Of a stretch of DNA of 64,000 bases, positions 1,493 through 35,950 are shown piece after piece. Every line of letters begins with the position of its first letter. The stretch's first letter is position 1. The translations under genes were made by a program, and so were the position numbers. Origin of the DNA: Macrostomum lignano (Eukaryota); contig NIVC01003891.1 in NCBI GenBank assembly GCA_002269645.1, positions 1 through 64,000 of the forward strand, in the 5' to 3' direction. The notes under the pieces were generated by a model, which was not told where the DNA came from, ran no database searches, and saw only the letters and a list, made by a program, of their open reading frames with translations.

Positions 1493-1494
1493 AT

Positions 1495-3615: not shown

Positions 3616-4090
3616 ACCTAGTTTGGACACAGTTTGAGACAGGTGAGCTGAGACACATAGTTTGGGACATATGAGCTGAGACACCTAGTTTGAGACAGGT
3701 GAGCAGAGACACCTAGTTTGAGACAGGTGAGCTGAGACACCTAGTTTGAGACAGGTGAGCTGAGACACCTAGTTTGAGACAGGTGATCTGAAACACCTAG
3801 TTTGAGACAGGTGAGTTGAGACACCTAGTTTGAGACAGGTGATCTGAGACACCTAGTTTGAGACAGGTTATCTGAAACACCTAGTTTGAGACAGGTGAGC
3901 TGAGACACCTAGTTTGAGACAGGTGAGTTGAGACACCTAGTTTGAGACAGGTGATCTGAAACACCTAGTTTGAGACAGGTGATCTGAAACACCTAGTTTG
4001 AGACAGGTGAGTTGAGACACCTAGTTTGAGACAGGTGATCTGAAACACCTAGTTTGAGACAGGTGATCTGAAACACCTAGTTTGAGACAG
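3616..4090. repeat. 28-bp minisatellite (acacctagtttgagacaggtgagctgag), ~16 copies
   Basis: Direct reading; lies between WDR1 and ETHE1. Confidence 0.95.
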
Positions 4091-4347
4091 TTGGCCCTGT
4101 TGGTGTGAATGCCAATTTTTGTGCGCAAGCCCCAAATTAATGTGGCCGAAAACCAGGGGTTCACGGCGCCAGAGCCAGACGTGCTTACCGCTGAGCAGCT
4201 CTGCCCCGATTGCAAAGATCAAGGGCTGCGGCAGGACGCACCAGCTTGCTGTTAGATAAGCTTGGCTGGCAAAGCACTATAAATTAATAAAGGCACGAAT
4301 TGTGGGCTCAACATTGCAGCCTGTGCTCAAAAACTGCCCTTGCCGCC

Positions 4348-5447
4348 ATGCGCCTGTTCCGCCCTCAGCCTCCTGCTTGCCACTCGGCGCTTCTGCTCAG
4401 GCGGAGGCGGCGGCAGCGGCAGCGATCGCATCATATTTCGTCAGCTATTCGAGCCTAAGAGTTGCACCTACACCTATCTGATTGGTTGCCAGGCAACGCG
4501 AAACGCTGTTTACATTGATCCGGTCATTGAAACAGCCGAACGCGATGCCAATTTGGTTAAGCAGCTGGGCCTGAATCTGGTGTACGCCATCAATACGCAC
4601 CTGCACGCTGATCACGTGACTGGCACCGGCCGACTCAAAGCGCTGCTGCCTGGCTGTCGTAGCGTTATTTCCGGTGCTTACAAAGCCAGAGCTGATGTGC
4701 ACATTGAGGACGGGACCAAGGTGAGATCTCCCGTTGTCAGCCTAGTCTCTGGGCTAAGATTAAGCCTACAGTAGAGTCTGCCACAAACAGTGCAGTAGAG
4801 TCTGCCACAAACAGTGCAGTAGAGTCTGCCACAAACAGTGCAGTAGAGTCTGCCACAAACAGTGCAGTAGAGTCTGCCACAAACAGTGCAGTAGAGTCTG
4901 CCACAAACAGTGCAGTAGAACCCCCCTTTGAATAGTTCCAGAGAGTTAGAAATAAATTTCTCAACAGCAGCGTTAATCATCACAAAGCGGAAGTTGCGCT
5001 TTTTGTCCTACTATCAGTAGCTTTCATCGCCCATTTTAACATCCGCAGATTGACTTTGGCCGACTGCAGCTGGAGACGCGGTCAACTCCCGGCCACACGG
5101 ACGGCTGCCTCACCTACGTGTTGCACAGCCACGCCATGGCTTTCACAGGCGACGCGCTTCTCATTCGCGGCTGCGGCCGAACCGACTTCCAGCAGGGCTC
5201 GCCTGATCGCCTGTACGAGTCGGTGCACAGCCAGATATTCAGCCTGCCTGAGCACTACCTGCTCTATCCTGCTCACGACTATACGGGTCAGTCTGTCACC
5301 ACCGTAGCCGAGGAGAAGAAATACAACAGCCGGCTGACCAAATCCAAAGCTGAATTCATCAATATTATGAATAACTTGAACCTGCCCTATCCTAAACAGA
5401 TTGATACGGCCCTGCCGGCCAATATGATCTGCGGAATGCAGGACTGA
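4348..5447 (+). CDS. ETHE1: Persulfide dioxygenase ETHE1 (exons 4348-4720, 5049-5447), with an apparent 1-nt insertion near 4363
   Basis: IFRQLFE..SCTYTYL, THLHADH (HxHxDH), [40 protein letters not shown]. Phase-0 GT-AG intron 4721-5048. The only nearby ATG (4348) is one base out of frame. Confidence 0.92.
4769..4918. repeat. 24-bp minisatellite in the ETHE1 intron, ~6 copies
   Basis: cagtagagtctgccacaaacagtg repeated. Confidence 0.95.
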
Positions 5448-8400: not shown

Positions 8401-8929
8401 ACAAAGCAGATTCATGACTGTCAAATTTGAAAGCAAAGAAAATTAGGCCTAGGCCTAAGCAAAGTACATTTTGAAAATTAAAATTTTATAAGTAATTGAT
8501 GAAGAAGAAAGTAGATTCTGTAACTCAGAGATTCTAATGTTTAAAATATTTGGTCAATTTATAAGACATCTTTTGTAGCTAGTATATGCATCTGGTACAC
8601 TCAGTAATTTAAAAATATTTGTTAAAATACTTAAACAAATTGTTTTCTGCATAAATAAAAATCTCTCAAAGTGTACAAGAATATATCTTAATTATTTTTT
8701 GTTTTTCCTTCAAGTTCATTTGCATATTCTTTTGGAGTATATTAATAAATATATACTATTATCAGTGTTATTCTCATTTGTTATCAAAATGGCTATTATG
8801 CAATATGCAACAACTATTTTTTTTGTCTTTTAGGCTGTGTAATAGAACCAATATATGTATTTAAAAGATTTCAATTTTTCAATAAATTATGCAAGTGCAC
8901 ATGCACAACCTTGGGAATCACTTGGTTGT

Positions 8930-9000
8930 TTCTATTGGCAACACACACATGTAAATTGCTATTGGCTGAGAACAGTCATGTGACTACTATTCCATCCAAT
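8930..9000. promoter_or_regulatory. Possible CCAAT-box/E-box cluster ~600 bp upstream of eIF6
   Basis: Two tattgg motifs, gtcatgtgac and ccaat within 70 bp. Could equally be transposon-derived. Confidence 0.25.
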
Positions 9001-9598
9001 GCCTTACTATACTGAGATTAGCAAAATATTTATCTTGTATTGTGGCATAAAGAAGACACAAAAAAGCAAGTATAAAAATTACAAGGTAAAAGTACAATTA
9101 AACTAAAGTTTACATTTTAATTATTAATAGCTGATCAAAATAAGATAGTGACAAAATCGTTTTGTCCAAAGTAAAGTTAAATAAGTCTTGAAACTTGTGT
9201 AAGTTACAAAATTGATGACCAAAGAATAAAAAAGACAAGAATGGGCAGAAAGGAAAGAGGGGGAAGCAGTACAGGGAAGCTAGAAAGTGTTAAGCCAGTT
9301 TAAAAACTTAAATGGCATTTTTAGTCAAATATAACTAATTTGCATAGACAGTGTAATTTCAATGCTGTTTAATAGTTTCTTTCTACATTATTAGTTAGCT
9401 AGATAAAAAATTGTGAAATAAAAATCTCAATTGGTCAGAAAAACTCTTTTTAACCTTGATTTCTCACTTGGTGGTTGGCTTTGCCAGTTCCTGTTTTCTT
9501 TAATTTCATTCCAATATGCAAATAGTTAGCATAAAGTCTGTGGTACTCTGTGTTTTCATTTTTCATGTAAATTTTGTCATCTAGCAAAAAAGTTTTTA

Positions 9599-12500
9599 AT
9601 GGCTGTCAGAACCGACTTTGAGGGCAGTAGCGATGTTGGCGTTTTCGCCACCCTGACTAACAAATACTGCCTGGTTGCTATTGGTGGCTCCGAGAATTTC
9701 TACTCAGTATTCGAAGGCGAACTCGAAGAGATTCCCGTGATTCACACCTCCATTGCCGGGATTCGCAGCATTGGCCGGATGACTGCCGCTAACAGCCATG
9801 GCCTCATTGTGCCATCCAATACCACAGACCAGGAGCTGCAGCATCTGGTCAATTCTCTGCCAGATGGTGAGTCTGTGCAATAATGCCATTTGTCATTTTT
9901 AGCTGTGCAATAATGCCATTTGTCATTTTTAGCTGTGCAACAATGCCATTTGTCATTTTTAGCTGTGCAACAATGCCGTTTATCATTGTTAGCTGTGCAA
10001 CAATGCCGTTTATCATTGTTAGCTGTGCAACAATGCCATTTATCATTGTTAGCTGTGCAACAATGTCATTTGTCATTTTTAGCTGTGCAATAATGCCATT
10101 TGTCATTTTTAGCTGTGCAACAATGCCATTTGTCATTTTTAGCTGTGCAACAATGCCATTTGTCATTTTTAGCTGTGCAACAATGCCGTTTATCATTGTT
10201 AGCTGTGCAACAATGCCGTTTATCATTGTTAGCTGTGCAACAATGCCATTTATCATTGTTAGCTGTGCAACAATGTCATTTGTCATTGTTAGCTGTGCAA
10301 CAAAGCCATTTGTCATTTTTAGCTGTGCAACAATGCCATTTGTCATTTTTAGCTGTGCAACAATGCCGTTTATCATTGTTAGCTGTGCAACAATGCCATT
10401 TGTCATTTTTAGCTGTGCAACAATGCCATTTGTCATTTTTAGCTGTGCAACAATGCCATTTGTCATTTTTAGCTGTGCAACAATGCCATTTGTCATTTTT
10501 AGCTGTGCAACAATGCCGTTTATCATTGTTAGCTGTGCAACAATGCCGTTTATCATTGTTAGCTGTGCAACAATGCCATTTATCATTGTTAGCTGTGCAA
10601 CAATGTCATTTGTCATTGTTAGCTGTGCAACAAAGCCATTTGTCATTTTTAGCTGTGCAACAATGCCATTTGTCATTTTTAGCTGTGCAACAATGCCATT
10701 TGTCATTTTTAGCTGTGCAACAATGCCGTTTATCATTGTTAGCTGTGCAACAATGCCATTTGTCATTTTTAGCTGTGCAACAATGCCATTTGTCATTTTT
10801 AGCTGTGCAACAATGCCGTTTATCATTGTTAGCTGTGCAACAATGCCATTTGTCATTTTTAGCTAAGCAACAATGCCGTTTATCATTGTTAGCTGTGCAA
10901 CAATGCCATTTGTCATTTTTAGCTGTGCAACAATGCCATTTGTCATTTTTAGCTGTGCAACAATGCCATTTGTCATTTTTAGCTGTGCAACAATGCCATT
11001 TGTCATTTTTAGCTGTGCAACAATGCCATTTGTCATTTTTAGCTGTGCAACAATGCCGTTTATCATTGTTAGCTGTGCAACAATGCCATTTGTCATTTTT
11101 AGCTGTGCAACAATGCCATTTGTCATTTTTAGCTGTGCAACAATGCCGTTTATCATTGTTAGCTGTGCAACAATGCCATTTGTCATTTTTAGCTAAGCAA
11201 CAATGCCGTTTATCATTGTTAGCTGTGCAACAATGCCATTTGTCATTTTTAGCTGTGCAACAATGCCATTTGTCATTTTTAGCTGTGCAACAATGCCATT
11301 TGTCATTTTTAGCTGTGCAACAATGCCATTTGTCATTTTTAGCTGTGCAACAATGCCATTTGTCATTTTTAGCTGTGCAACAATGCCATTTATCATTGTT
11401 AGCTGTGCAACAATGCCATTTGTCATTTTTAGCTGTGCAACAATGCCATTTGTCATTTTTAGCTGTGCAACAATGCCGTTTATCATTGTTAGCTGTGCAA
11501 CAATGCCGTTTATCATTGTTAGCTGTGCAACAATGCCATTTGTCATTTTTAGCTGTGCAAAAAAGCCATTTGTGATCATTGAAGAGTGAAATTATGACGA
11601 ATACAAAACTACCAGAGCCCTGTCTGTCCTCATCTTCAGGCGTTGTTGTCCAACGCGTTGAGGAGCGCCTGTCGGCCTTGGGCAACATAATCGCATGCAA
11701 TGACTATTGTGCACTGGTTCACCCGGACTTGGATAGAGAGACAGAAGAAGTGATTGCTGATACGCTCAAGGTAAGTTGATACTTTTAGTAGCTTATTTAA
11801 ACAAAAAAATTGATAGGTTTTCAATATTTTTTGTAAAGCATCGGTACGTAGAACGATAAGTTGAGCTTTTAACTTATCGATTTGAAACATTGACTGAACG
11901 TGCTACTTGCAGTAGAAGTATTGAGGTAACCCGATGAAAGCGTACGCTCGTACCTACGCCAAGAAGCGTCCCAGATGACACAGGTAAAATAGAAAAGAAG
12001 AGACTCCAAATGACTCTAAAACAACAATATGTCACGGTAGAAGTCACATTGATGCGATTTATTGTCTGCGACTCTGTGGCCGTTAAAGCGCACTTGCATC
12101 GCTTGATGAATCTGAGTCACATCTCGGGCGATTCAACGGCGTTCTCCAGTCGCTGAAAAGTCGCAGAAGAAGCGCTTGACCGTCACTGTAGAATCGTTAG
12201 TGCGTCACTTCTGAGACGCTCTGGATGTGTTACAGAGTGAGGGTTGCCGTTGACCAATCAACATCAAGTCTAGCGTACTCAGTAGTAAGTTAAGCGCCAA
12301 CATAACGACTCTTTAACGACATTTTCGTGACCCTTACGATTCTACAACTGACGTGATGCCCTTGTGACTCAACAGGTAATGGAGACATAATTGACAAGCT
12401 ATCAATTTCCCAATAAACCAGGTGGAGGTGTTTCGCCACTCAATCGGCGAGCACCTGCTAGTTGGCAGCCGGTGCGCCCTCACCAATCGCGGCGGTCTGG

Positions 12501-12757
12501 TGGACCCGATGACCCCGAAGGCCAGCTTAGACGAGTTGGCCTCCCTGCTGCAGGTGCCGCTAGCCGCTGGCACAATTAACAAAGGCTCGCCAGTGATTAG
12601 TGCTGGTTTAGTTGTGAACGACTGGATCGGATTCTGCGGAGTGGACACCACGGCCACTGAGTTGGGCCTTGTTGAAAGCGTCTTTCAGCTGGGCGACAAG
12701 CTGCCCTCGTCTGTGGCTGCTAATATGCGCGACGCATTGATCGACACCATGGCCTAG
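9599..12757 (+). CDS. EIF6: Eukaryotic translation initiation factor 6 (exons 9599-9866, 11640-11770, 12422-12757)
   Basis: [74 protein letters not shown]. Both introns are GT-AG and phase-compatible. Confidence 0.96.
9873..11570. repeat. 30-bp minisatellite (~56 copies) filling eIF6 intron 1
   Basis: agctgtgcaacaatgccatttgtcattttt plus a ccgtttatcattgtt variant. The 30-bp phase is kept throughout, and the array starts ~6 nt after the donor. Confidence 0.98.
11971..12350. mobile_element. Dispersed MITE-like repeat, copy 2, in eIF6 intron 2
   Basis: Similar to 1084-1400; diverged, and the right end is not evident. Confidence 0.65.
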
Positions 12758-12857
12758 GAGGCTCTGATAATGTACGACTGATTTTCTTAAGTACAGCTTA
12801 CTGATGACAAGTCTTCATTTGACAGGTTATTGTTATTAACTGGCGAAAATTCCACTG

Positions 12858-13380
12858 ATTAATAGTGGCACAGGTGAAATATTGGCTGGTTAATAGTGAC
12901 ACAGGTGAAATATTGGCTGATTAATAGTGACACAGGTGAAATATTGGCTGATTAATAGTGACACAGGTGAAATATTGGCTGATTAATAGTGACACAGGTG
13001 AAATATTGGCTGATTAATAGTGACACAGGTGAAGTATTGGCTGATTAATAGTGACACAGGTGAAATATTGGCTGATTAATAGTGACACAGGTGAAGTATT
13101 GGCTGATTAATAGTGACACAGGTGAAATATTGGCTGATTAATAGTGACACAGGTGAAATATTGGCTGATTAATAGTGGCACAGGTGAAGTATTGGCTGAT
13201 TAATAGTGACACAGGTGAAATATTGGCTGATTAATAGTGGCACAGGTGAAATATTGGCTGATTAATAGTGACACAGGTGAAATATTGGCTGATTAATAGT
13301 GGCACAGGTGAAATATTGGCTGATTAATAGTGGCACAGGTGAAATATTGGCTGATTAATAGTGGCACAGGTGAAGTATTA
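12858..13380. repeat. 31-bp minisatellite (gattaatagtgacacaggtgaaatattggct), ~17 copies, downstream of eIF6
   Basis: Direct reading. Confidence 0.96.
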
Positions 13381-16423: not shown

Positions 16424-16447
16424 TGTCTGTCTGTCTGTCTGTCTGTG

Positions 16448-16498
<51 letters not shown>

Positions 16499-16499
16499 G

Positions 16500-16534
<35 letters not shown>

Positions 16535-16535
16535 G

Positions 16536-16594
<59 letters not shown>

Positions 16595-16638
16595 GTGTCT
16601 GTCTGTCTGTCTGTCTGTCTGTCCTGTCTGTCTGTCTG

Positions 16639-16674
<36 letters not shown>

Positions 16675-16702
16675 CTGTCTGTCTGTCCTGTCTGTCTGTC
16701 TG

Positions 16703-16767
<65 letters not shown>

Positions 16768-16877
16768 GCCTGCCTGTCTGTGTCTGTCTGTCTTTCTGTC
16801 TGTCTGTCTGTGTCTGTCTGTCTGTCTGTCTGCCTGTCTGTCTGTCTGTCTGTCTGTCTGTCCTGTCTGTCTGTCTG

Positions 16878-16913
<36 letters not shown>

Positions 16914-16941
16914 CTGTCTGTCTGTCCTGTCTGTCTGTCTG

Positions 16942-17014
<73 letters not shown>

Positions 17015-17092
17015 GCCTGCCTGTCTGTGTCTGTCTGTCTTTCTGTCTGTCTGTCTGTGTCTGTCTGTCTGTCTGTCTGTCGGTCTGTCTGT
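16424..17092. repeat. (CTGT)n microsatellite, left flank of the 17.1-25.8 kb element
   Basis: Direct reading. Confidence 0.97.
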
Positions 17093-17096
17093 GTTA

Positions 17097-20000
17097 CTGT
17101 CTGTGTGTTTACTTGGACCTTTCGTCGGTTCAGTTGCCGCATTAGCTGGACCTTTCGGTTTAGGTGGACAGCGTAGGTGGACCACCGAATAACTTTGCTC
17201 CAGACAACGTTGAGTGGTTTATAAGGACCACAAAACAGAGCAATGGATGTCAGGAATGAGTGCCGCAAAGCGCAACATTCATCGGCATTCATGTTCAGAA
17301 AAAAATGCATTTCAGTTTACATGGACTTTTTGCGATGTCCACCTAAACCGGGTCTGAAAGGTCCAGCTAAACAAAAATTGTCAATGAAAATTTCTGAATT
17401 TGTCTGTTGCAGTCTGTTTCAGTCTGTTTCAGTCTGTTAGCAATTTACCTTTTTACAACATCTTTTACGCCAAAAAAGTAATATATTTAATTTCCGTGAT
17501 CTTAAATTAGGCACACACGGCTTTGTTAAGCTTTCTTCAAAGCCTTCCCACGGTTTTGTGCCCGAAAAATATTCGAATGACGGTTCCTTTATCACGTTAG
17601 CTGCTGATAGTAGTTTAAATGGATATTGTATCCTATAGGCCTATCGACTTTCCTTCTTTTAGATTCCTTTTGATATTTGATATTTATAAAAGTGTCGAAC
17701 CACAATAAGAAATAATCCTGGTGGAGAGTTTCGGCCTTGAGAAGAAGGTTCTGCTCTCAGATCCCTGTTTAGGGGTGGGGAAGCACCAAACCAAGCTCAA
17801 AGCGAAGGTCTGATATTTTTTATTTTAGTTTAGCCTGGGTCCCACTAAACACAGTTGCACGCACATCAAATCGTCTGTTGAGGTCCATGTAAACGAAACT
17901 CGAAGCGCACAACACAGTCACACAGACTAGAGCTGCATTGGTTAAGGACTGATTTCGGAGAGGTTGGTAAAAATCGGACCACCCCCACTGGGAATGCCAG
18001 CCAATAGGAGCAGTCCAAGGGACAGACAGTCCGTCGACTAAACGAGTCAGAGAGGGGCAGAGCTATAAAAGTGAAAACCTTTGGTCTAGCTAAAACAGGC
18101 TTACATGGACCACCTAATTTCTCGGATAGACTGAAACATTCAACTGAACTGTCAATAGTCAATACACGAGAAGACACGAATGTCTCGCAGGAGATATCCC
18201 AATAACACAGAGTCCCGGAGAGGTGCAACAGTAACAGATGTTACATCAAGTGGACTGGATACCTAAGGTAAGCATAAAATGAAAAGATTCAATTTAAAAG
18301 ATTGACTTCCTCGCATTCTAATTCTCTAGTAAAACCAAGCCTTTGGATTACTACGTAGCTAATAAAACAACACACGACTTTTAGATCTAACTACTTGGGA
18401 GCCAGTGAAAAATGTTTTCGACGACGTTTTTGAAAAATTGCATTGAAATTGCAGTAAGTACCAAAACGAAGTGTTATTTAGGATGAAAAAATGATAAACA
18501 TTAGTAAAGAGCCTCAATAAGAACCTACTCAATCGAAATTTCAGAAATATGTTTTCCTGCCAGACCAAAAAGCAAAATCTACCAGGTAAGCAAATCGGTG
18601 CACATACAACTTAAGCTGGTCCAGCTAACCTACAGACTGTACTGACGCCACTGAGACAGTCTGTTTAAGAGTCTTTCAGATGGGAGGTGAAATTCAAGTT
18701 TAGGAGGTCCAGCTAACCGACAGACTGTACTGACACCAATATGCCAGTCTGTTTCAAAGTCTCAGTAGAATCAAAGTATCAGTTGTAAACTGTCAATCCT
18801 GAATTCTCGTATAAATGCCAAATTTGACAGGCCCAGTCTGGAGACGGCAAGTCAGCTTTGATGCAGACAAGTGACGCAAGCAACTCCAGCAAGATATCGA
18901 CCAAGACTTTAAAGGCCAAGAGCCATTAAGTCGACTATAGGCTGACGCCTCACGTCTGGACACCTCTAAGAAGTCGGCTGAGGCACCTGAGACGCTGGTC
19001 AGTCCGGTGGACAGACGTGTTGCCTCATCGTAGTTCAGTCATCGGACGAGATTGAATCTACTGTGGTGAGCTTGCTGCAAAAGTGTTCAGGTTTGGTTTA
19101 TCATATTCTAATTGAACTGGTCCAGCTAACCTACAGACTGTACTGACGCAACTGATCCAGTCTGTTTAGGAGCCTCACAGATGGGAGGTGGAATTCAGGT
19201 TTAGGTGGTCCAGCTGACCTACAGACTGTACTGACGCAACTGAGCCAGTCTGTTTAGGAGCCTCACAGATGGAGGTGGAATTCAAGTCCAGGAGGTCCAG
19301 CTAACCTACAGACTGTACTGACACCACTGTGCCAGTCTGTTTCAAAGTCTCAGTAGGAAATCAGTTGTAAATTCTCAATCCTGAATTCTCGTATAAATGT
19401 CAAATTTGACAGGCCCAGTCTGGAGATGGCAAGTCAGCATTGATGCAGACGAGTGACGCAAGCTACTCTGGCAAGATGTCGACCAAGACTTTAAAGGCTA
19501 AGAGCCATTGAATCGATTATAGGCTGACATTTCACGTCTGGACACCTCTAAAAAGTTTGCTGAGGCACCTGAGACGCTGTTCAGTCTGATGGACAGACGT
19601 GTTGCCTCATCTCAGTTCAATCATCGGACGAGATTGAATCTACTGTGGTGAGCTTGCTGCAAAAGTGTTCAGATTTGGCTTATCCTATTCTAATTTAACT
19701 GGTCCAGCTAACCTACAGACTGCACTGACGCAACTGAGCCGGTCTGTTGAGGAGCCTCACAGATGGAGGTGGAATTCAAGTTTAGGTGGTCCAGCTAAAC
19801 TACAGACTGCACTGACGCAACTGAGCGAGTCTGTTTAGCAGCCTCACAGATGGAGGTGGAATTCAAGTTTAGGTGGTCCAGCTAACCTACAGACTGTACT
19901 GACGCAACTGAGCCAGTCTGTTTCAAAGTCTCAGTAGGATATCAGTTGTAAATTCTCAATCCTGAATTCTCGTATAAATGTCAAATTTGACAGGCCCAGT

Positions 20001-23000
20001 CTGGATACGGCAAGTCAGCATTGATGCAGACGAGTGACGCAAGCAACTCTGGAAAGATGTCGACCAATACTTCAAAGGCCAAGAGCCATTGAGTCGACTA
20101 TAGGCTGACATTTCACGTCTGGACACCTCTAAAAAGTTTGCTGAGGCACCTGAGACGCTGTTCAGTCTGATGGACAGACGTGTTGCCTCATCTCAGTTCA
20201 ATCATCGGACGAGATTGAATCTACTGTGGTGAGCTTGCTGCAAAAGTGTTCAGATTTGGCTTATCCTATTCTAATTTAACTGGTCCAGCTAACCTACAGA
20301 CTGCACTGACGCAACTGAGCCGGTCTGTTGAGGAGCCTCACAGATGGAGGTGGAATTCAAGTTTAGGTGGTCCAGCTAACCTACAGACTGCACTGACGCA
20401 ACTGAGCCAGTCTGTTTAGCAGCCTCACAGATGGAGGTGGAATTCAAGTTTAGGTGGTCCAGCTAACCTACAGACTGTACTGACGCCACTGAGCCAGTCT
20501 GTTTCAAAGTCTCAGTAGGATATCAGTTGTAAATTCTCAATCCTGAATTCTCGTATAAATGTCAAATTTGACAGGCCCAGTCTGGATACGGCAAGTCAGC
20601 ATTGATGCAGACGAGTGACGCAAGCAACTCTGGAAAGATGTCGACCAATACTTCAAAGGCCAAGAGCCATTGAGTCGACTATAGGCTGAGACCTCACATC
20701 TGGACACCTCCCAAAAAAGTTTGCTGAGGCACCTGAGACGCTGGTCAGTCCGGTGGACAGATATGGTGAGCTTGCTGCAAAATTGTTCAGATTTGGTTTA
20801 TCCTTTTCTAAATGTAATTGAACTGGTCCAGCTAACCTACAGACTGCACTGACGCAACTTAGCCAGTCTGTTTAAGAGCCTCACAGATGGGAGGTGGAAT
20901 TCAAGTCCAGGAGGTCCAGCTAACCTACAGACTGTACTGACGCAACTGAGCCAGTCTGTTTAGGAGCCTCACAGATGGGAGGTGGAATTCAGTTTAGCTG
21001 GTCCAGCTAACCTACAGACTGTACTGACGCAACTGAGCCAGTCTGTTTAGGAGCCTCACAGATGGAGGTGGAATTCAAGTTTAGCTGGTCCAGCTAACCT
21101 ACAGACTGTACTGACGCCACTGAGCCAGTCTGTTTCAAAGTCTCAGTAGGAAATGAGTTGTTAATTCTCAATCCTGTATTCTCGTATAAATGTCAAATTT
21201 GACAGGCCCAGTCTGGAGACGGCAAGTCAGCTTTGATGCAGACGAGTGACGCAAGCAACTCTGGCAAGATGTCGACCAAGACCTTAAAGGCCAAGAGCCA
21301 TTGAATCGATTATAGGCTGACATCTCACGTCTGGACACTTGTAAAAACTTTGCTGAGGCACCTGAGACGCTGTTCAGTCTGATGGACAGACGTGTTGCCT
21401 CATCTCAGTTCAGTCATCGGACGAGATTGAATCTACTGTGGTGAGCTTGCTGCAAAAGTGTTCAGTTTTGGCTTATCCTATTCTAATTGAACTGGTCCAG
21501 CTAACCTACAGACTGTACTGACACAACTGAGCCAGTCTGTTTAGGAGCCTCACAGATGGAGGTGGAATTCAAGTTTAGCTGGTCCAGCTAACCTACAGAC
21601 TGCACTGACGCCACTGAGCCAGTCTGTTTAGGAGCCTCACAGATATTCAAAGTTTAGGAGGTCCAGCTAACCTACAGACTGCACTGGCGCAACTGAGCCA
21701 GTCTGTTTAGGAGCCTCACAGATGGGAGGTGGAATTCAAGTCCAGGAGGTCCAGCTAACCAACAGACTGTACTGACGCAACTGAGCCAGTCTGTTTCAAA
21801 GTCTCAGTAGGATATCAGTTGTAAATTCTCAATCCTGAATTCTCGTATAAATGTCAAATTTGACAGGCCCAGTCTGGAGATGGCAAGTCAGCATTGATGC
21901 AGACGAGTGACGCAAGCTACTCTGGCAAGATGTCGACCAAGACTTTAAAGGCTAAGAGCCATTGAATCGATTATAGGCTGACATTTCACGTCTGGACACC
22001 TCTAAAAAGTTTGCTGAGGCACCTGAGACGCTGTTCAGTCTGATGGACAGACGTGTTGCCTCATCTCAGTTCAGTCATTAGACGAGACTGAATCTACTGT
22101 GGTGAGCTTGCTGCAAAAGTGTTCAGTTTTGGCTTATCCTATTCTAATTGAACTGGTCCAGCTAACCTACAGACTGCACTGACACAACTGAGCCAGTCTG
22201 TTTAGGAGCCTCACAGATGAAGTTTAGGTGGTCCAGCTAAACTACAGACTGCACTGATGCCACTGAGCCAGTCTGTTTAGGAGCCTCACAGATGGAGGTG
22301 GAATTCAAGTTTAGGTGGTCCAGCTAACCTACAGACTGTACTGACGCCACTGAGCCAGTCTGTTTAGGAGCCTCACAGATTGGAGGTGGAATTCAAGTTT
22401 AGCTGGTCCAGCTAACCTACAGACTGCACTGACGCAACTGAGCCAGTCTGTTTAGGAGCCTCACAGATGAAGTTTAGGTGGTCCAGCTAAACTACAGACT
22501 GCACTGATGCCACTGAGCCAGTCTGTTTAGGAGCCTCACAGATGGAGGTGGAATTCAAGTTTAGGTGGTCCAGCTAACCTTCAGACTGTACTGACGCCAC
22601 TGAGCCAGTCTGTTTCAAAGTCTCAGTAGGAAATGAGTTGTTAATTCTCAATCCTGTATTCTCGTATAAATGTCAAATTTGACAGGCCCAGTCTGGAGAC
22701 GGCAAGTCAGCTTTGATGCAGACGAGTGACGCAAGCAACTCTGGCAAGATGTCGACCAAGACCTTAAAGGCAAGAGCCATTGAATCGATTATAGGCTGAC
22801 ATCTCACGTCTGGACACTTGTAAAAACTTTGCTGAGGCACCTGAGACGCTGTTCAGTCTGATGGACAGACGTGTTGCCTCATCTCAGTTCAGTCATCGGA
22901 CGAGATTGAATCTACTGTGGTGAGCTTGCTGCAAAAGTGTTCAGTTTTGGCTTATCCTATTCTAATTGAACTGGTCCAGCTAACCTACAGACTGTACTGA

Positions 23001-25788
23001 CACAACTGAGCCAGTCTGTTTAGGAGCCTCACAGATGGAGGTGGAATTCAAGTTTAGCTGGTCCAGCTAACCTACAGACTGCACTGACGCCACTGAGCCA
23101 GTCTGTTTAGGAGCCTCACAGATATTCAAAGTTTAGGAGGTCCAGCTAACCTACAGACTGCACTGGCGCAACTGAGCCAGTCTGTTTAGGAGCCTCACAG
23201 ATGGGAGGTGGAATTCAAGTCCAGGAGGTCCAGCTAACCAACAGACTGTACTGACGCAACTGAGCCAGTCTGTTTCAAAGTCTCAGTAGGATATCAGTTG
23301 TAAATTCTCAATCCTGAATTCTCGTATAAATGTCAAATTTGACAGGCCCAGTCTGGAGATGGCAAGTCAGCATTGATGCAGACGAGTGACGCAAGCTACT
23401 CTGGCAAGATGTCGACCAAGACTTTAAAGGCTAAGAGCCATTGAATCGATTATAGGCTGACATTTCACGTCTGGACACCTCTAAAAAGTTTGCTGAGGCA
23501 CCTGAGACGCTGTTCAGTCTGATGGACAGACGTGTTGCCTCATCTCAGTTCAGTCATTAGACGAGACTGAATCTACTGTGGTGAGCTTGCTGCAAAAGTG
23601 TTCAGTTTTGGCTTATCCTATTCTAATTGAACTGGTCCAGCTAACCTACAGACTGCACTGACACAACTGAGCCAGTCTGTTTAGGAGCCTCACAGATGAA
23701 GTTTAGGTGGTCCAGCTAAACTACAGACTGCACTGATGCCACTGAGCCAGTCTGTTTAGGAGCCTCACAGATGGAGGTGGAATTCAAGTTTAGCTGGTCC
23801 AGCTAACCTACAGACTGTACTGACGCCACTGAGCCAGTCTGTTTAGGAGCCTCACAGATTGGAGGTGGAATTCAAGTTTAGCTGGTCCAGCTAACCTACA
23901 GACTGCACTGACGCAACTGAGCCAGTCTGTTTAGGAGCCTCACAGATGAAGTTTAGGTGGTCCAGCTAAACTACAGACTGCACTGATGCCACTGAGCCAG
24001 TCTGTTTAGGAGCCTCACAGATGGAGGTGGAATTCAAGTTTAGCTGGTCCAGCTAACCTTCAGACTGTACTGACGCCACTGAGCCAGTCTGTTTCAAAGT
24101 CTCAGTAGGAAATGAGTTGTTAATTCTCAATCCTGTATTCTCGTATAAATGTCAAATTTGACAGGCCCAGTCTGGAGACGGCAAGTCAGCTTTGATGCAG
24201 ACGAGTGACGCAAGCAACTCTGGCAAGATGTCGACCAAGACCTTAAAGGCCAAGAGCCATTGAATCGATTATAGGCTGACATCTCACGTCTGGACACTTG
24301 TAAAAACTTTGCTGAGGCACCTGAGACGCTGTTCAGTCTGATGGACAGACGTGTTGCCTCATCTCAGTTCAGTCATCGGACGAGATTGAATCTACTGTGG
24401 TGAGCTTGCTGCAAAAGTGTTCAGTTTTGGCTTATCCTATTCTAATTGAACTGGTCCAGCTAACCTACAGACTGCACTGACGCAACTGAGCCAGTCTGTT
24501 TAGGAGCCTCACAGATGGAGGTGGAATTCAAGTTTAGGAGGTCCAGCTAACCTACAGACTGTACTGACGCAACTGACCAGTCTGTTTAGGAGCCTCACAG
24601 ATATTCAAAGTTTAGGAGGTCCAGCTAACCTACAGACTGCACTGACGCAACTGACCAGTCTGTTTAGGAGCCTCACAGATATTCAAGTTTAGGTGGTCCA
24701 GCTAAACTACAGACTGTACTGACGCCACTGAGCCAGTCTGTTTAGGAGCCTCACAGATGAAGGTGGAATTCAAGTTTAGGTGGTCCAGCTAACCTACAGA
24801 CTGTACTGACGCCACTGAGCCAGTCTGTTTCAAAGTCTCAGTAGGAAATCAGTTGTAAATTCTCAATCCTGAATTCTCGTATAAATGTCAAATTTGACAG
24901 GCCCAGTCTGGAGACGGCAAGTCAGCTTTGATGCAGACGAGTGACGCAAGCAACTCTGGCAAAATGAAGACTAGTTTTTTGTGCTCAACCGCAATAGTTT
25001 GTTTACGATGATATTGACTGCGACAGCTTGTGGCTTTCTGTGAGATGATTCCGCTATCCTTCGTAACATGTCTTGTCCGTCCGTTAAAATTTTTTTTATT
25101 GTTCAAAAATTGAGTGGAAAGTTGTTCTATTGTAATACGTGAAATTATTTGGGCAAATTTATTATTTTAGTATTTATTCAGTATTTATTAATTATCATCG
25201 TCAATCTACTTGCTTTTTTGGCACATAATTGGGACGTTAAGTGTGTTTCTTTAGATTTATCATTATTCTAGTGCACTACAAATATGAATTTTTGCTATTT
25301 AAAGTTTTGCTTGGCCGTTAATTTGCACTTGTAACTATTTTTCTCGGCCTAAAAATTAGTTGCATTTGATTCATTTGTTTTTAATGAGGATGATCGGTTC
25401 TTGAGTCCGGAGCAAAGTAGAACTGAATGCATAATTTGCACTTTATTACATATTTTGTATTTGGGGCTTCCGTCACGTGACTTTTTAGTGTTTTTTCTCG
25501 TGCTTAACAGTACTGGGTCGATAATAATCCCAGTACTCTGCTAAATAAATGATGGTCCACCTAAACGGTGTCTTTTTGAAGGTCCACCTAAAACAGGTCC
25601 GGGCTGGTCCAGCTATCCCAGTTGAAAGTGACATGCAGTTTCCACGAGATGGCTAATCTGCAGGCTAAACTGAAAGACAACCCACGCTAACTTTTCGTGT
25701 AGAGACAAAAGACACCGGTTTTATAGCGAAACTAGGTGGTCCACCTAATGCATTAACAAAACTCTGGTCCCGCTAAACACACAGACAG
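17097..25788. mobile_element. Putative ~8.7-kb non-autonomous element with bipartite imperfect inverted termini and an internal higher-order repeat array
   Basis: 17097-17119 matches the reverse complement of 25766-25788 at 20/23, and 17139-17152 matches the reverse complement of 25738-25751 at 13/14. The GGTCCA(G/C)CTAA motif recurs at both ends and through the array. No intact transposase ORF. Confidence 0.55.
18615..24960. repeat. Hierarchical tandem array: ~40 copies of a ~50-bp double-palindrome core, short variable linkers and 10 long (~370-bp) modules
   Basis: Core ggtccagctaacctacagactgtactgacgcaactgagccagtctgttt. Long modules start near 18750, 19340, 19920, 20500, 21130, 21790, 22610, 23270, 24090 and 24825 (last one truncated). 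Confidence 0.95.
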
Positions 25789-25794
25789 CGGTAG

Positions 25795-25795
<1 letters not shown>

Positions 25796-25836
<41 letters not shown>

Positions 25837-25956
25837 GTCTGTCTGTCTGTCTGTCTGTGTCTGTCTGTCTTTCTGTCTGTCTGTCTGTCTGTGTCTGTCT
25901 GTCTGTCTGTCTGCCTGTCTGTCTGTATGTCTGTCTGTCTGTCTGTCTGTCTGTCC

Positions 25957-26007
<51 letters not shown>

Positions 26008-26060
26008 GTCTGTCTGTCTTTCTGTCTGTCTGTCTGTGTCTGTCTGTCTGTCTGTCTTCC

Positions 26061-26100
<40 letters not shown>

Positions 26101-26132
26101 CTGTCTGTCTGTCCTGTCTGTCTGTCTGTCTG

Positions 26133-26163
<31 letters not shown>

Positions 26164-26213
26164 CTGTCTGTCTGTGTCTGGTTTGTCTTTATGTCTGTCT
26201 GTCTATGTGTCTG

Positions 26214-26245
<32 letters not shown>

Positions 26246-26307
26246 TTCTGTCTGTCTGTCTGTCTGCCTGCCTGTCTGTCTGTCTGTCTGTCTGTCCTGT
26301 CTGTCTG

Positions 26308-26340
<33 letters not shown>

Positions 26341-26423
26341 GCCTTAGTGTTTGTCTGTCTGTCTGTCTGTCCGTCTGTCCTGTCTGTCTGTCTGTGTCTG
26401 TCTGTCTGTCTGTCTGTCTGTCC

Positions 26424-26467
<44 letters not shown>

Positions 26468-26495
26468 CTGTCCGTCTGTCCTGTCTGTCTGTCTG

Positions 26496-26531
<36 letters not shown>

Positions 26532-26594
26532 AGTCTGTCTGTCTGTCTGTCTGTCTGTGTCTGGTTTGTCTTTATGTCTGTCTGTCTGTCTGTC

Positions 26595-26647
<53 letters not shown>

Positions 26648-26677
26648 GTCTGGTTTGTCTTTATGTCTGTCTGTCTG

Positions 26678-26728
<51 letters not shown>

Positions 26729-26744
26729 GTCTGGTTTGTCTTTA

Positions 26745-26779
<35 letters not shown>

Positions 26780-26818
26780 GTCTGTCTATCTGTCTGTCTG
26801 TCTGTCTGTCTGTCTGTG

Positions 26819-26887
<69 letters not shown>

Positions 26888-26910
26888 TTCTGTCTGTCCG
26901 TCTGTCCTTC
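25796..26910. repeat. (CTGT)n microsatellite, right flank, same orientation as the left tract
   Basis: Direct reading. Confidence 0.97.
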
Positions 26911-28707: not shown

Positions 28708-31700
28708 ATGAGCTTCGCCAGCCAGGAGGCGAGTCCCGTAAAGCCCAGCCTGCTGACCGTGGTGAACTCGCACAAAATTCTGCGGGCTCGTCAGTCCACT
28801 TTCACGCCAGACGGCCTGCAGCGCCTGCGCCAGTTCGGGCTTGAGGCCGCCTGCGGCTGCGCCCGCTGCTGCGGCGCCAACGGCGGCTTCGCTTCCCCCG
28901 GCGACAATGACAGCTGCGAGAAGTCGCGGGCGAAGTGGCAGCTCCAGCTGGAGCCGCGCGACATTCAGCTGCCCGACTTCGCCTGCGAGGTACGACAGCA
29001 GCCGGTGGATGAAGATGATGAAGACAACCATGCTGACATCGGCGAGGACGCCGACGTGGACGCGGAAGTCGCTGATAGCCGCCGACTCGCCGTCCTGGCC
29101 GACTGCTTTCTGCTGCTGCTGCGCGCCGGTCCCCGCGCCGCGGCTGCCGTCGGGGACCTCGCCGAGCAGGCCGAGCTGGGACTCTGCCGGGCGCACTGGA
29201 CGGCCATCGTTGCCTCGGCGGATTCCGTCATGCACGAGGCCACCGTCTGCCTTCGAGGGGTTCGGCTTGAAGCTGCCGACGGTCCCCTCGGCGGCTGGGT
29301 TCGCCTGGCTTGGCCCGGCGAGGGATGCCAGCCTGGGGTGCAGCTGGAGCCGCTGTCCTGCAGTGCGGCCACCCTGCTGGAGCTGCTGCTGGCCGCCAGC
29401 CAGCTGGACGCCCGCGGCCTACTGGCCCAGCTGCCGCCCGAGCCCGGCCTGATGGCCCTCGCCGCCGCTGAATTCCAGGCCGGCAGCAGCTCGCAGCCGC
29501 ACTCGCCAGTTTCGATGCCGCACCCGCCGACGCTGATGCTGCCGCTGGTCAGCCAGCAGTCGGCGCAGGCCGCATCGGCCGCCGGCCAGCTGCCGCCGCA
29601 GTCGCCGCACGCGCAGGCCTCGACGCTGCTGCAGTCGCCTCTTGGCCAGCAGCCGCGGTCGCCGCGGTTTTTCAAGCGCAAATTCGACTCGCTGTGGGCC
29701 TTCTTCGGCACCGGCGGGGCGCCGGTCGCCCAGCCGTCGCGGATGTTCTACGCGGCGCTGAGCCGGCCGGAGCTCGAGTCCTGCCTGCACGTGGCGCGGA
29801 AGCCGCGGGCGCGCCGGCAGAAGCTCTGGTCGGTGCTGCACACCCGGACGCTGTACTTTTTCAAGCAGCGCTCGGCCGCCTGCAACGCCGAATTCGAGGT
29901 TGACCTGGAGAACCTCACCGGCCTGGAGGTCACCGAGGACGCGGCGGCCAAGGATGCGGCCAGGCGGGACCCGCTCTCACCCTGCGGCCTGCGCACGGTC
30001 ACCCTCCGGTTCTCCAACTCGAAGAAGTGCGTCTACCTGACCCCGCTGGACAAGTTCGACCTGCGCCGCTGGGTTGACAGCTTTGAGCGTCTGTTGAACG
30101 GCGCTAGCGGCGGCGGCGGCGGCTCGGTGGGCACCCCGGATGAGGACGCGGCTGGCCGCCTTCAGGCGCGGCGATTGTCCGGCCTGAGCAACTCCTTCCA
30201 CAATCTGTCCTCGGCCGGGGCCAGCCGGCCGGCTTCTCCGCCGTCCATGGCGGCCGGCGGCACGGCGGGTGCGGGCGGCGGGGCTGGAGGCGGCGGCGGA
30301 GGCGGCGCCGGCGGCGGCAAAGTGGCTGGCAAAGACGGCCGGCTCGGGGTGCCCTCGGTGAGGAGGGCAATCAGGCCTGTAAACTTTTGACAGATTAGCG
30401 TTAATCCGGTATAATTAAGGTCTTAAAAAGAGCCGGGGGTAAACGGCGAGAGTAACTATGACCGTAATTGGTTTGTACGTGCGTAAAATACTTCTTCATC
30501 CAATGAACTTTTCAACGGTAATTTTTTTGCAGAATCTGAACAATCGAGAAATGATGGCTTCCTGCAACAATTTAGATGAGCTGAGCGGCCGGCGTGAGTT
30601 ACAATAATACCTGCGTAGTTTTTATCTTTCGATATGTTTCGTATTCTACTTTATGGGCTGTAAAACTAACACTTCTAGTAAAAGTGAGCATAGGATACCC
30701 TGGATATCCCACAGCGCATGTAATGAACCAATACCCCATCTCATGGAATACCTGAGCTCATGGAATACCCCAGCTCGTGGAATACGGCACCGGCTCGAGG
30801 AATACCCCAGCTCATGGAATACCCCAGCTAGCTCGTAGAATACCCCAGCTCGAGGAATACCCCAGCTCGTGGAATACCCCAGCTCGAGGAATACCCCAGC
30901 TCGTGGAATACCCCAGCTCATGGAATACCCCAGCTCGAGGAATACCCCAGCTCGTGGAATACCCCAGCTCGTGGAATACCCCAGCTCGAGGAATACCCCA
31001 GCTCATGGAATACCAACAGTTCAGAGTTTGCCGCCTCCGCAGAGTCCCCAGTCCGCAAGTTCAGTCCTGTCAGCCAGGCCGCCCTGCTGAGCCATCCGGA
31101 CGGCGCCATGGCGGGCATGCCGATGCCCATCATCACGGTGAACTGCAGCGATGATCTCAGCCCGCAGAGAGACTGCGACGATGAGGAGCAGGAAGAGGAG
31201 GACGCCGACTGCCAGGTCGGTTGGGGATCGGCTGCCGCGAACTCGATTCTACTCTCCCATCTACTCTCCCATCTACTCTCCCATCTACTCTCCCATCTAC
31301 TCTCCCATCTACTCTCCCATCTACTTTCCCATCTACTCTCCCATCTACTCTCCCATCTACTCTCCCATCTACTTTCCCATCAACTCTCTCATCTACTCTC
31401 CCATATACTCTCCCATGTACTCTCCCATCTACTCTCCCATCTACTTTCCCATCTACTTTCCCATCTACTTTCCCATCTACTCTCCCATATACTCTACCAT
31501 CTACTCTACCATCTACTCCCCCATCTACTCTCCTATTTACTCTCCTATTTACTCTCCTATCTACTCCTATTTACTCTCCCATCTACTCTCCTATTTACTC
31601 TCCCATCTACTCTCCCATCTATTCCCCTATCTACTCTCCCATCTACTTTCCCATCTACTCTCCCATCTACTTTCCCATCTACTCTCCCATCTACTCTCCT

Positions 31701-35592: not shown

Positions 35593-35950
35593 TGTCAAGT
35601 CGCGCCCAGTAAACGATGACAAGGCCGCCCGTGGGCTTGGTTTGAGTCAAGTACGAAGTTGTGTATTTGAGATGAGCGAATTATTGCAATGATTGTGAGA
35701 TACGAGGTGGTAGGTGGCGAGACCAATATATAGGCTTAAAAGACAACAAGTAAGTGGGCTTAAAACTCAGAATCGATCACTACTGAATATTATCATGTCA
35801 AGGGGGAGAGAGAGAAAAAGTACGCAGAGCAGCGTACACCGGAGTAGGCCGGTTTGGTTAGTTAGGCTGGCTGGCTAGTTAGAGTTACTCATAATTGGAC
35901 TCAGGTGAGTCAGGTGCAGTGCAGTACATCAAAACACGCCCGGCACCTCA
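35593..35950 (-). repeat. 3' LTR
   Basis: Matches 39869-40226. Confidence 0.98.

What the first reader, a model, noticed from the sequence alone, without database searches (positions are those of the whole stretch)
16424..26910. ~8.7-kb inverted-repeat-bounded element embedded between two (CTGT)n tracts: candidate microsatellite-targeting or microsatellite-carrying mobile unit
Seen: two same-orientation (CTGT)n tracts bracket the unit. Its ends form a bipartite imperfect inverted repeat (17097-17119 vs 25766-25788, 20/23; 17139-17152 vs 25738-25751, 13/14). The terminus begins with CTGTCTGTG, mimicking the flanking microsatellite. The motif GGTCCA(G/C)CTAA is clustered at both ends (reversed at 17140-17180; forward at 17335-17370 and 25550-25620) and is also the core of the internal array. 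Established: subterminal repeated motifs mark transposase-binding ends in CACTA/hAT-type elements, and Helentron-derived DINE-1/HINE elements carry a GTCY microsatellite plus expandable central tandem repeats. Inference: this is one non-autonomous element whose own end motif was amplified into a satellite. It is either a DNA transposon inserted into (GACA)n or a HINE-like element, and I cannot match it to a named family.
Basis: partly seen in the sequence, partly recalled or inferred. Interest (0 to 1): 0.8.

Follow-up and report, generated by a model that had tools for sequence, protein, structure and literature searches.

The report
Satellite-filled transposon inserted in a microsatellite
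In one duplicated copy of a flatworm (Macrostomum lignano) locus, an 8.7-kb non-coding element with inverted-repeat ends and an internal satellite sits inside a (CTGT)n microsatellite that two sister copies of the locus carry uninterrupted, so it is a real, recent insertion of a probably mobile but unclassified element.

Summary
The window is the first 64 kb of Macrostomum lignano contig NIVC01003891.1. Two paralogous contigs, about 1% diverged in unique flanks, carry one uninterrupted (CTGT)n tract between the same unique flanks. These are empty sites. A third contig with 0-2 mismatches per flank segment reproduces the left junction.

The inserted unit (17085/17097-25788) is non-coding. It is bounded by 23-nt inverted repeats plus a second conserved block. 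Copies of the motif GGTCCAsCTAAAC sit near both ends in opposite orientation. A rare CGGT unit flanks each end and may be a 4-bp target duplication. Inside is a 6.35-kb array of 87-bp monomers, each with a back-to-back motif pair, alternating with a 357-bp spacer.

The best reading is a non-autonomous cut-and-paste (TIR) DNA transposon of unresolved superfamily. The Helentron/HINE reading fails three of four testable features. One complication remains. About 1.45 kb of variant ("type B") microsatellite next to the element, on both sides, is also absent from the empty sites. The block may therefore have arrived by recombination between microsatellites. Copy number, target preference and an autonomous partner could not be tested. 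Interest is moderate.

The parts
16424..16639 (+). Left outer (CTGT)n, 'type A' (GTGT and C interruptions). It is orthologous to the left part of the uninterrupted arrays in L006 and L007.
16640..17084 (+). Left inner (CTGT)n, 'type B' (GT, TTGT, CTTT, CTGC and CTGCCTGC interruptions in a roughly 243-bp higher-order period). It is absent from the empty sites. It ends with the single CGGT unit (17081-17084), a candidate target-site duplication.
17085..17119 (+). Left terminus. The 23-nt terminal inverted repeat is 17097-17119. It is preceded by a 12-nt partial duplicate of the terminus, CTGTCTGTGTTA (17085-17096).
17139..17152 (+). Second conserved block of the left end (GCATTAGCTGGACC). It matches 25738-25751 at 13/14.
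17109..17229 (-). Cluster of 4-5 motif copies in reverse orientation (17109, 17142, 17160, 17173, 17219). These are the presumed protein-binding sites of the left end.
17142..17373 (.). Foldback of about 230 nt. Reversed motifs at 17142-17173 pair with forward motifs at 17333-17370. Single-strand folding z-score is -5.5.
17402..17438 (+). Internal 10-bp repeat (GTCTGTTTCA) x3.7. It is the only GTCT-like simple repeat inside the unit.
17439..18617 (+). Unique left arm, non-coding. It contains internal copies of the end sequence, for example 17838-17854 GGTCCCACTAAACACAG, which matches the right terminus at 16/17.
18618..24966 (+). Internal satellite of about 10.4 higher-order units. Each unit has 1.6-5.3 monomers of 87 bp plus a 357-bp spacer. 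Each monomer carries the palindrome TTAGsTGGTCCAGCTAA and the inverted pair ACAGACTG...CAGTCTGT.
21494..24451 (+). Very recent tandem duplication inside the array, 2 x 1479 bp with 1476 identical positions.
24967..25765 (+). Unique right arm, non-coding. It has forward motif copies at 25554, 25581, 25606 and 25738, and a stem pairing 25563-25576 with 25707-25720.
25766..25788 (+). Right terminal inverted repeat, GGTCCCGCTAAACACACAGACAG.
25789..26785 (+). Right inner (CTGT)n, 'type B'. It begins with the only CGGT unit of this tract (25789-25792) and is absent from the empty sites.
26786..26906 (+). Right outer (CTGT)n, 'type A'. From the CTAT landmark onward it is orthologous to the right part of the arrays in L006 and L007.

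Best explanation
The unit at 17085/17097-25788 is a non-autonomous class II (terminal-inverted-repeat, cut-and-paste) DNA transposon of an unnamed Macrostomum lignano family. It landed in a (CTGT)n microsatellite.

Shown:
- It is present in one paralogue lineage and absent from two others, which keep a continuous microsatellite.
- It ends in imperfect 23-nt inverted repeats followed by a second conserved block.
- It carries no recognisable gene or RNA.
- Each end has 4-5 copies of GGTCCAsCTAAAC, in opposite orientation on the two sides.

Inferred:
- A transposase supplied in trans binds these motifs, cuts at the CTGTCTGTG.../...CACAGACAG termini and integrates with a short staggered cut. The duplicated rare CGGT unit would be its trace.
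- The 6.35-kb internal satellite grew by unequal exchange from a unit of about 581 bp. Its 87-bp monomers each hold a back-to-back pair of the same motif. Growth is still recent, as shown by a 1479-bp duplicate that is 99.8% identical.
For: - Empty sites. L006 (NIVC01000887.1) and L007 (NIVC01000142.1) align to the window up to about 17047-17108 and resume at about 26132-26221. Each has a single tract of about 620-720 bp of (CTGT)n between identical unique flanks.
- Divergence. The unique flanks differ by only about 0.6-1.3% in substitutions. The three lineages form a near-trichotomy.
- Second occupied contig. L003 (NIVC01004858.1) reproduces the left microsatellite, the junction and 2.4 kb of the unit at 99.3% identity.
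- Inverted repeats sit exactly at the ends of the non-microsatellite DNA and are significant.
- The motif occurs 73 times against 1.8 expected, only inside the unit, with opposite orientation at the two ends.
- CGGT occurs once in each flanking tract, both times at the end next to the unit, and never in the empty-site tracts.
- There is no Pfam, Rfam or tRNA signal, and no ORF above 120 aa.
- Precedents for TIR transposons that insert in microsatellites are MuTAnT, Micron and TAFT (PMC4486113).
Against: - Only one insertion was seen, in two near-identical contigs. No other copy occurs in the 64-kb window or in about 116 kb of paralogous DNA.
- No autonomous partner could be sought.
- The target duplication is ambiguous. 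CGGT requires a 12-nt terminal duplication on the left. A TA reading requires 3 extra nt on the right.
- The outer 11 nt of the repeat are microsatellite-like, so the exact terminus is uncertain.
- The unit abuts 'type B' microsatellite on both sides. That type is also missing from the empty sites, which simple transposition into the ancestral array does not predict.
- Recombination between the flanking direct arrays could delete the unit and mimic an empty site.
Confidence: 0.6

Rival explanations
1. Arrival by microsatellite homology rather than by a transposase at this locus. In this reading a 10.1-kb block (16640-26785) came from another (CTGT)n locus. The block is the unit together with its own 'type B' (CTGT)n flanks. 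It could have come by ectopic gene conversion or double crossover. Alternatively it was a circle popped out by recombination between its flanking arrays and re-integrated by a single crossover. The second route gives outer type A, inner type B and the unit in the middle, as observed. The unit could still have been a transposon when it first entered the donor array.
For: - The variant maps show 18 GT-type interruptions and a roughly 243-bp higher-order pattern only in the tract parts next to the unit, on both sides.
- Both empty sites and the outer parts of the window's tracts share type A variants and landmarks ('GTGT n C 4' on the left; 'CTAT ... CCGT' on the right).
- Landmarks are conserved among all three paralogues, so the tracts do not turn over fast enough to make in-situ replacement the obvious default.
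Against: - No donor locus was seen.
- The type B core could have evolved in this lineage before a normal transposition.
- Homology-driven transfer does not by itself explain the inverted repeats or the CGGT duplication at the edges of the unit.
Confidence: 0.2
2. The unit is ancestral to all paralogues. It was lost from L006 and L007 by recombination between the two flanking direct (CTGT)n tracts, which would leave a single tract that looks like an empty site.
For: The unit is flanked by 0.7-kb and 1.1-kb direct repeats, which are good substrates for deletion. The three lineages are about equally diverged, so the tree gives no polarity.
Against: - It needs two losses, or one if L006 and L007 are sisters.
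- Both losses must have crossed over within the short outer type A parts, so that every type B variant was removed.
- The empty-site tracts (620-720 bp, all type A) are longer than the window's type A remnants (216 + 121 bp).
Confidence: 0.1
3. A Helentron-derived non-autonomous element (HINE / DINE-1-like) that moves by rolling-circle transposition and carries a GTCY microsatellite plus central tandem repeats.
For: - The module order resembles a HINE: an end motif, a short GTCT-like repeat at 17402-17438, a variable stretch, central tandem repeats, then an end motif.
- The motif is half of a palindrome (AGGTGGTCCACCT), similar in form to the palindromic subTIRs of mite and Culex Helentrons.
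Against: - The two ends are symmetrical. Motif copies sit about 12 and 40-45 nt from each end. A HINE has them 2-4 nt from the 5' end and 38-60 nt from the 3' end, with a 3' stem-loop.
- The target is (CTGT)n, not TT or a T-rich site.
- The outer, type-A parts of the GTCT tracts lie outside the repeats and exist at the empty sites.
- The right flank after the array is 820 bp, not about 60 bp (PMC4067079, PMC7492417).
Confidence: 0.05
4. Assembly artefact: a chimeric join or a collapsed or expanded repeat in a PacBio assembly.
For: The region consists of microsatellite and satellite. L003 breaks inside the array. A 1479-bp duplicate is 99.8% identical.
Against: The left junction is reproduced in a second contig. 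Both junctions show matching inverted repeats and a matching CGGT, which a random misjoin would not create.
Confidence: 0.03

Closest known systems
Microsatellite-targeting TIR transposons: MuTAnT (Mutator-like, Medicago), Micron (rice), TAFT (maize)
   Same: A non-autonomous TIR element sitting inside a microsatellite, with paralogous empty sites as the evidence of insertion (PMC4486113).
   Different: Those families target (TA)n, are short, have hundreds of documented copies, and for MuTAnT have a 9-bp duplication and a known transposase. Here the target is a tetranucleotide (CTGT)n. There is one copy, of 8.7 kb. The element's own terminus imitates the target repeat, and no transposase is known.
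Helentron-derived HINEs: DINE-1 (Drosophila), Cg_HINE (oyster), lepidopteran MINEs with (GTCY)n
   Same: Non-coding. Central tandem repeats with variable copy number. Association with a GTCT-type repeat. A palindromic end motif (PMC4067079, PMC7492417).
   Different: HINEs have asymmetric ends, a 3' stem-loop, insertion at TT without duplication, and the microsatellite inside the left flank. Three of these features (asymmetric ends, TT insertion and the internal microsatellite) were tested here and not met, and the 3' stem-loop was inconclusive.
Tandem-repeat-containing MITEs of bivalves (DTC84 of Donax trunculus, pearl/CvA)
   Same: A modular left flank, tandem-repeat core and right flank, with a neighbouring microsatellite (PMC3879986, listed).
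   Different: Those carry 1-5 monomers of about 160 bp and are now assigned to Helentrons. Here there is a 6.35-kb two-level array (87-bp monomers plus a 357-bp spacer) between true terminal inverted repeats.
Tetris foldback transposon of Drosophila virilis and its TIR-220 satellite (from my own knowledge, Dias et al. 2014; not checked here)
   Same: A transposon whose end-derived repeats were amplified into a satellite.
   Different: In Tetris the tandem repeats are part of the long inverted termini. Here the array is central and in one orientation, and only the 11-13-nt motif is shared with the ends.

Membership tests
Class II TIR (cut-and-paste) transposon, non-autonomous | Terminal inverted repeats at the exact edges of the inserted DNA | tested here: met
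   20/23 plus 13/14. Score 31 against 14.1 +/- 2.3 in shuffles, and 0 of 2000 random windows reach it.
Class II TIR (cut-and-paste) transposon, non-autonomous | Occupied versus empty site in related sequence | tested here: met
   L006 and L007 have one continuous (CTGT)n between the same unique flanks. The caveat is that deletion between the flanking arrays could mimic this.
Class II TIR (cut-and-paste) transposon, non-autonomous | Target-site duplication of a length typical of a superfamily | tested here: inconclusive
   CGGT occurs once in each tract, both times next to the unit, and never in the empty sites. The microsatellite context and a 12-nt terminal duplicate leave 4 bp (CGGT) and 2 bp (TA) both possible.
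Class II TIR (cut-and-paste) transposon, non-autonomous | Several dispersed copies sharing the termini | not testable with these tools
   No M. lignano genome DNA search was available. No other copy was found in the window or in L003-L007, and none through protein look-ups.
Class II TIR (cut-and-paste) transposon, non-autonomous | Autonomous partner encoding a transposase with the same ends | not testable with these tools
   No ORF above 120 aa and no Pfam hit inside the unit. The genome could not be scanned.
Helentron-derived HINE / DINE-1 | Asymmetric ends: 5' subTIR 2-4 nt from the end; 3' subTIR 38-60 nt from the end | tested here: not met
   The motif copies lie symmetrically, about 12 nt and 40-45 nt from both ends (PMC4067079).
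Helentron-derived HINE / DINE-1 | Short palindrome / stem-loop between the 3' subTIR and the 3' terminus | tested here: inconclusive
   The only 3' palindromes are AATGCATT (25747-25754), read from the sequence, and a stem half made of the flanking microsatellite.
Helentron-derived HINE / DINE-1 | Insertion at TT / T-rich sites without target duplication | tested here: not met
   The insertion is inside (CTGT)n. The flanking bases are ...GTTA|C or CGGT|C on the left and G|CGGT on the right.
Helentron-derived HINE / DINE-1 | GTCY microsatellite inside the left flank of the element | tested here: not met
   The large GTCT tracts lie outside the inverted repeats, and the microsatellite exists at the empty sites. 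Only a 37-nt (GTCTGTTTCA)n lies inside.
Helentron-derived HINE / DINE-1 | Central tandem repeats | tested here: met
   The array at 18618-24966.
Microsatellite-targeting DNA transposons (Micron / MuTAnT / TAFT type) | Most copies of the family flanked by the same microsatellite | not testable with these tools
   Only one insertion is available. It is in (CTGT)n, and its terminus CTGTCTGTG imitates the target.
Foldback-type elements with satellite-forming termini (Tetris-like) | Tandem repeats forming part of long inverted termini | tested here: not met
   All 40 monomers (full and 48-bp truncated) found by BLAST and all spacers are in one orientation, in the centre of the unit.

The most novel reading that the evidence does not exclude
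A flatworm transposon family whose termini imitate (CTGT)n and which lives in, and spreads between, (CTGT)n microsatellites. Spread would occur either through a transposase with microsatellite target choice or through homology (pop-out circles or ectopic conversion that take 'type B' microsatellite along). The family would also turn back-to-back copies of its own binding site into an expanding satellite.
Probability: 0.15. Interest if true: 0.7.

Novelty: new member of a known kind. Interest (0 to 1): 0.4.

Why it matters
- It documents a young structural difference between the duplicated subgenome copies of a neopolyploid model flatworm whose repeats are largely unclassified.
- It is a concrete case of a mobile-element end motif becoming the seed of a satellite.
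- It hints that long microsatellites may act as landing pads, or as recombination handles, for moving a 10-kb block.
- If other copies share the (CTGT)n context, the family would extend microsatellite-targeting DNA transposons, so far documented for (TA)n in plants, to a tetranucleotide repeat in an animal.

Tried and rejected
Searches for other copies or for the organism that returned nothing:
- Exact-protein look-ups for the 560-aa neighbouring ORF, two ORFs of the unit and the gypsy ORF: nothing on record.
- Homology searches with the 560-aa ORF and with 634 aa of concatenated ORFs from the unit: no hit.
The same protein was accepted through cluster-member ids.
- Metagenome scan with the monomer core: 0 hits.
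- BLAST of the unit against L003-L007: only the allelic or duplicate copy in L003.

Searches that returned only chance-level matches:
- Metagenome scan with the terminal pattern GGTCCNNNTAAACACACAGACAG gave 5 contigs. All are one locus of an unrelated eukaryote, with a single motif next to a short (CAGA)n and no other similarity.
- Viral scan with the 17-nt palindrome gave 7 hits. I did not examine them, and I infer that this number is expected by chance for a pattern of that length.

Feature searches inside the unit:
- Rfam at E up to 1 gave only sub-threshold miRNA noise. There are no tRNAs and no Pfam domains.

Literature:
- Searches found no description of M. lignano transposon or satellite families.

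Ideas rejected:
- Seeding of the flanking tracts from the unit's own termini. The right terminus is inverted relative to the right tract.
- hAT-type 8-bp, Harbinger TTA and piggyBac TTAA duplications. None fits both junctions (read from the junction sequences).
Full report
**Origin of the window.** A WD-repeat exon at 1653-2400 is 99% identical to NCBI protein BOX15_Mlig006413g3 of Macrostomum lignano. The contig that encodes it, NIVC01003891.1 (assembly GCA_002269645.1, 71,190 bp), is 100% identical to window 1-12,993 over its first 12,993 bases. The window is therefore the first 64 kb of that contig. [quoted passage not shown] This explains why near-identical copies of the locus exist.

**The observation.** All stated features are present.
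- TRF reports (CTGT)n at 16424-17108 and 25795-26906.
- The sequence shows 17097-17119 CTGTCTGTGTGTTTACTTGGACC against the reverse complement of 25766-25788, CTGTCTGTGTGTTTAGCGGGACC (20/23).
- It also shows GCATTAGCTGGACC (17139-17152) against GCATTAGGTGGACC (13/14).
- The terminal alignment scores 31, against 14.1 +/- 2.3 for shuffles, and no random window out of 2000 reaches it. Without the 11 microsatellite-like nucleotides it still scores 26, against 13.1 +/- 2.2.
- GGTCCASCTAA with up to 1 mismatch occurs 73 times against 1.8 expected, and only between 17142 and 25776.
- The aligned motif consensus is GGTCCAnCTAAAC (alignment A1).
- Copies near the left end (17109, 17142, 17160, 17173, 17219) are reversed. 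Those in the right arm (25554, 25581, 25606, 25738, 25766) are forward.

**Empty sites.** The listing of cluster members gave ids for the eIF6 and WD-repeat proteins of paralogous genes. Those ids fetched the paralogous loci.
- L003 (NIVC01004858.1) is collinear with the window at 98-99%. It runs through the left microsatellite and 2.4 kb into the unit before the contig ends (L003 17317-19744 = window 17000-19428, 99.3%).
- L003 has 0-2 mismatches per flank segment relative to the window. It is the same locus assembled twice, or an allele.
- L006 (NIVC01000887.1) and L007 (NIVC01000142.1) align up to window 17047 and 17108, then resume at 26221 and 26132.
- Their sequence shows one uninterrupted (CTGT)n, about 620 bp and 720 bp long. 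It lies between exactly the same unique flanks...ggtgcctgttctagt and ccgtctgtccttcc(a/g)tcagtcaaatc....
- Unique flanks differ from the window by about 0.6-1.3% in substitutions. L006 and L007 differ from each other by about as much.

The unit is thus present in one of three closely related lineages, and the microsatellite pre-exists. It supports an insertion into (CTGT)n.

**Anatomy of the unit.**
- There is no ORF above 120 aa, no Pfam domain, no Rfam family above noise and no tRNA.
- The left arm (17097-18617) starts with the inverted repeat and the reversed motif cluster.
- A 230-nt foldback follows, in which 17142-17173 pairs with 17333-17370 (z = -5.5).
- The left arm also holds internal copies of the end sequence. 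For example, 17838-17854 GGTCCCACTAAACACAG matches the right terminus at 16/17.
- The array (18618-24966) has about 10.4 higher-order units. Each has 1.6-5.3 monomers of 87 bp plus a 357-bp spacer at 90-100% identity. The last spacer is cut at 136 bp.
- A 1479-bp segment is duplicated with 1476 identical positions.
- Each monomer carries the near-palindrome TTAGsTGGTCCAGCTAA, which is two motif copies back to back. It also carries ACAGACTG...CAGTCTGT. Its first 22 nt resemble the right terminus.
- The right arm (24967-25788) has forward motifs and a weaker stem.

It does not hold for longer end sequence.

**Junctions.**
- The left junction reads ...CTGT CGGT CTGT CTGT GTTA | CTGTCTGTGTGTTTAC...
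- The right junction reads ...GTAAACACACAGACAG | CGGT AGGT CTGT...
- CGGT occurs exactly once in each flanking tract, both times at the end next to the unit. It never occurs in the empty-site tracts.
- I read this as a candidate 4-bp target duplication. The unit would then start at 17085 with a 12-nt partial duplicate of its own terminus.
- A TA duplication (Tc1/mariner type; PMC5199201) is possible only if the right end carries three extra bases.
- 8-bp, TTA and TTAA duplications do not fit.
- The superfamily remains open. Sola and Ginger make non-TTAA 4-bp duplications, according to my own knowledge, which I did not check.

**A complication.** Variant maps of the tracts give these results.
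- Both empty sites consist only of 'type A' interruptions (GTGT, C).
- The outer parts of the window's tracts (16424-16639 and 26786-26906) share type A and its landmarks.
- The inner parts next to the unit, on both sides (16640-17084 and 25789-26785), are 'type B'. They contain 18 GT interruptions plus TTGT, CTTT, CTGC and CTGCCTGC in a higher-order period of about 243 bp.
- The lineage-specific block is therefore 16640-26785, about 10.1 kb.

Two histories fit. The array in this lineage may have evolved a type B core before an ordinary transposition. Alternatively, the unit came together with type B microsatellite from another (CTGT)n locus. That could happen by ectopic conversion, or by pop-out and re-integration of a circle through microsatellite homology. 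The second route predicts exactly the observed order A-B-unit-B-A. I cannot decide between these histories without the genome.

**Rivals.**
- Deletion between the flanking direct tracts could mimic empty sites. It needs crossovers confined to the short type A parts, in two lineages. It also leaves the longer all-type-A tracts of L006 and L007 unexplained.
- The HINE/Helentron reading shares central tandem repeats and a palindromic motif form (subTIR list). It fails on the symmetry of the ends, on the target and on the position of the microsatellite.
- A misassembly is unlikely. A second contig shows the same left junction, and both junctions carry matching repeats and CGGT.

**What could not be done.** No tool could search M. 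lignano genomic DNA. Protein-based routes to other copies returned nothing. Pattern scans of metagenomes and viral contigs gave only chance-level matches. Copy number, target preference, the true target duplication and the autonomous partner are therefore untested.

**Verdict.**
It is a genuine, recent, TIR-bounded, non-coding insertion in a microsatellite. The most likely identity is a non-autonomous cut-and-paste transposon of an unnamed family (confidence about 0.6). It is not a HINE.
- It is a new member of a known kind, of moderate interest. A more unusual possibility, microsatellite-mediated spread, remains open.

Noticed in passing
window 1-64000: The window is exceptionally rich in minisatellites (79 TRF rows; units of 12-34 bp in arrays of 0.3-1.7 kb). 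The same arrays recur in the paralogous contigs with different copy numbers.
   Followed up: partly
window 9569-12757: The eIF6 gene (244-aa reading frame rebuilt from three exons; annotated as a 254-aa partial product) has a 1.7-kb array of a 30-bp minisatellite (9873-11573) inside its first intron.
   Followed up: partly
window 35948-39898 (-): One uninterrupted 1316-aa ORF of a Ty3/gypsy retrotransposon, with gag, protease, reverse transcriptase, RNase H and integrase domains. It is possibly a young copy. The exact product is not on record as a gene.
   Followed up: partly
window 28708-30390 (+): A GC-rich 560-aa ORF with only a sub-threshold PH-domain match and no homologue in the protein collection. 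No gene is called at the corresponding place in L006 or L007, although the DNA is 96% conserved there.
   Followed up: partly
window 45973-46770 (-): A long exon encoding a C2 domain preceded by a hydrophobic stretch that may be a transmembrane segment, with a glutamine-rich linker. It looks synaptotagmin-like.
   Followed up: no
window ~7802-7805 versus L006 7605-8432: L006 carries about 0.8 kb at this point that the window lacks. This is another insertion/deletion difference between paralogues.
   Followed up: no
window 26176-26747: The right microsatellite contains a complex 19-nt variant (GTCTGGTTTGTCTTTATGT) four times, the last three at roughly 80-90-bp spacing. This shows higher-order duplication inside the microsatellite.
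   Followed up: no
L008-L012 (JGI metagenome contigs Ga0056130_1045768 and others): One locus of an unidentified eukaryote, found in five metagenome contigs, has GGTCCAACTAAACACACAGACAG directly followed by a short (CAGA)n/(GA)n run. It has no further similarity to the unit, and I judged it a chance match.
   Followed up: yes
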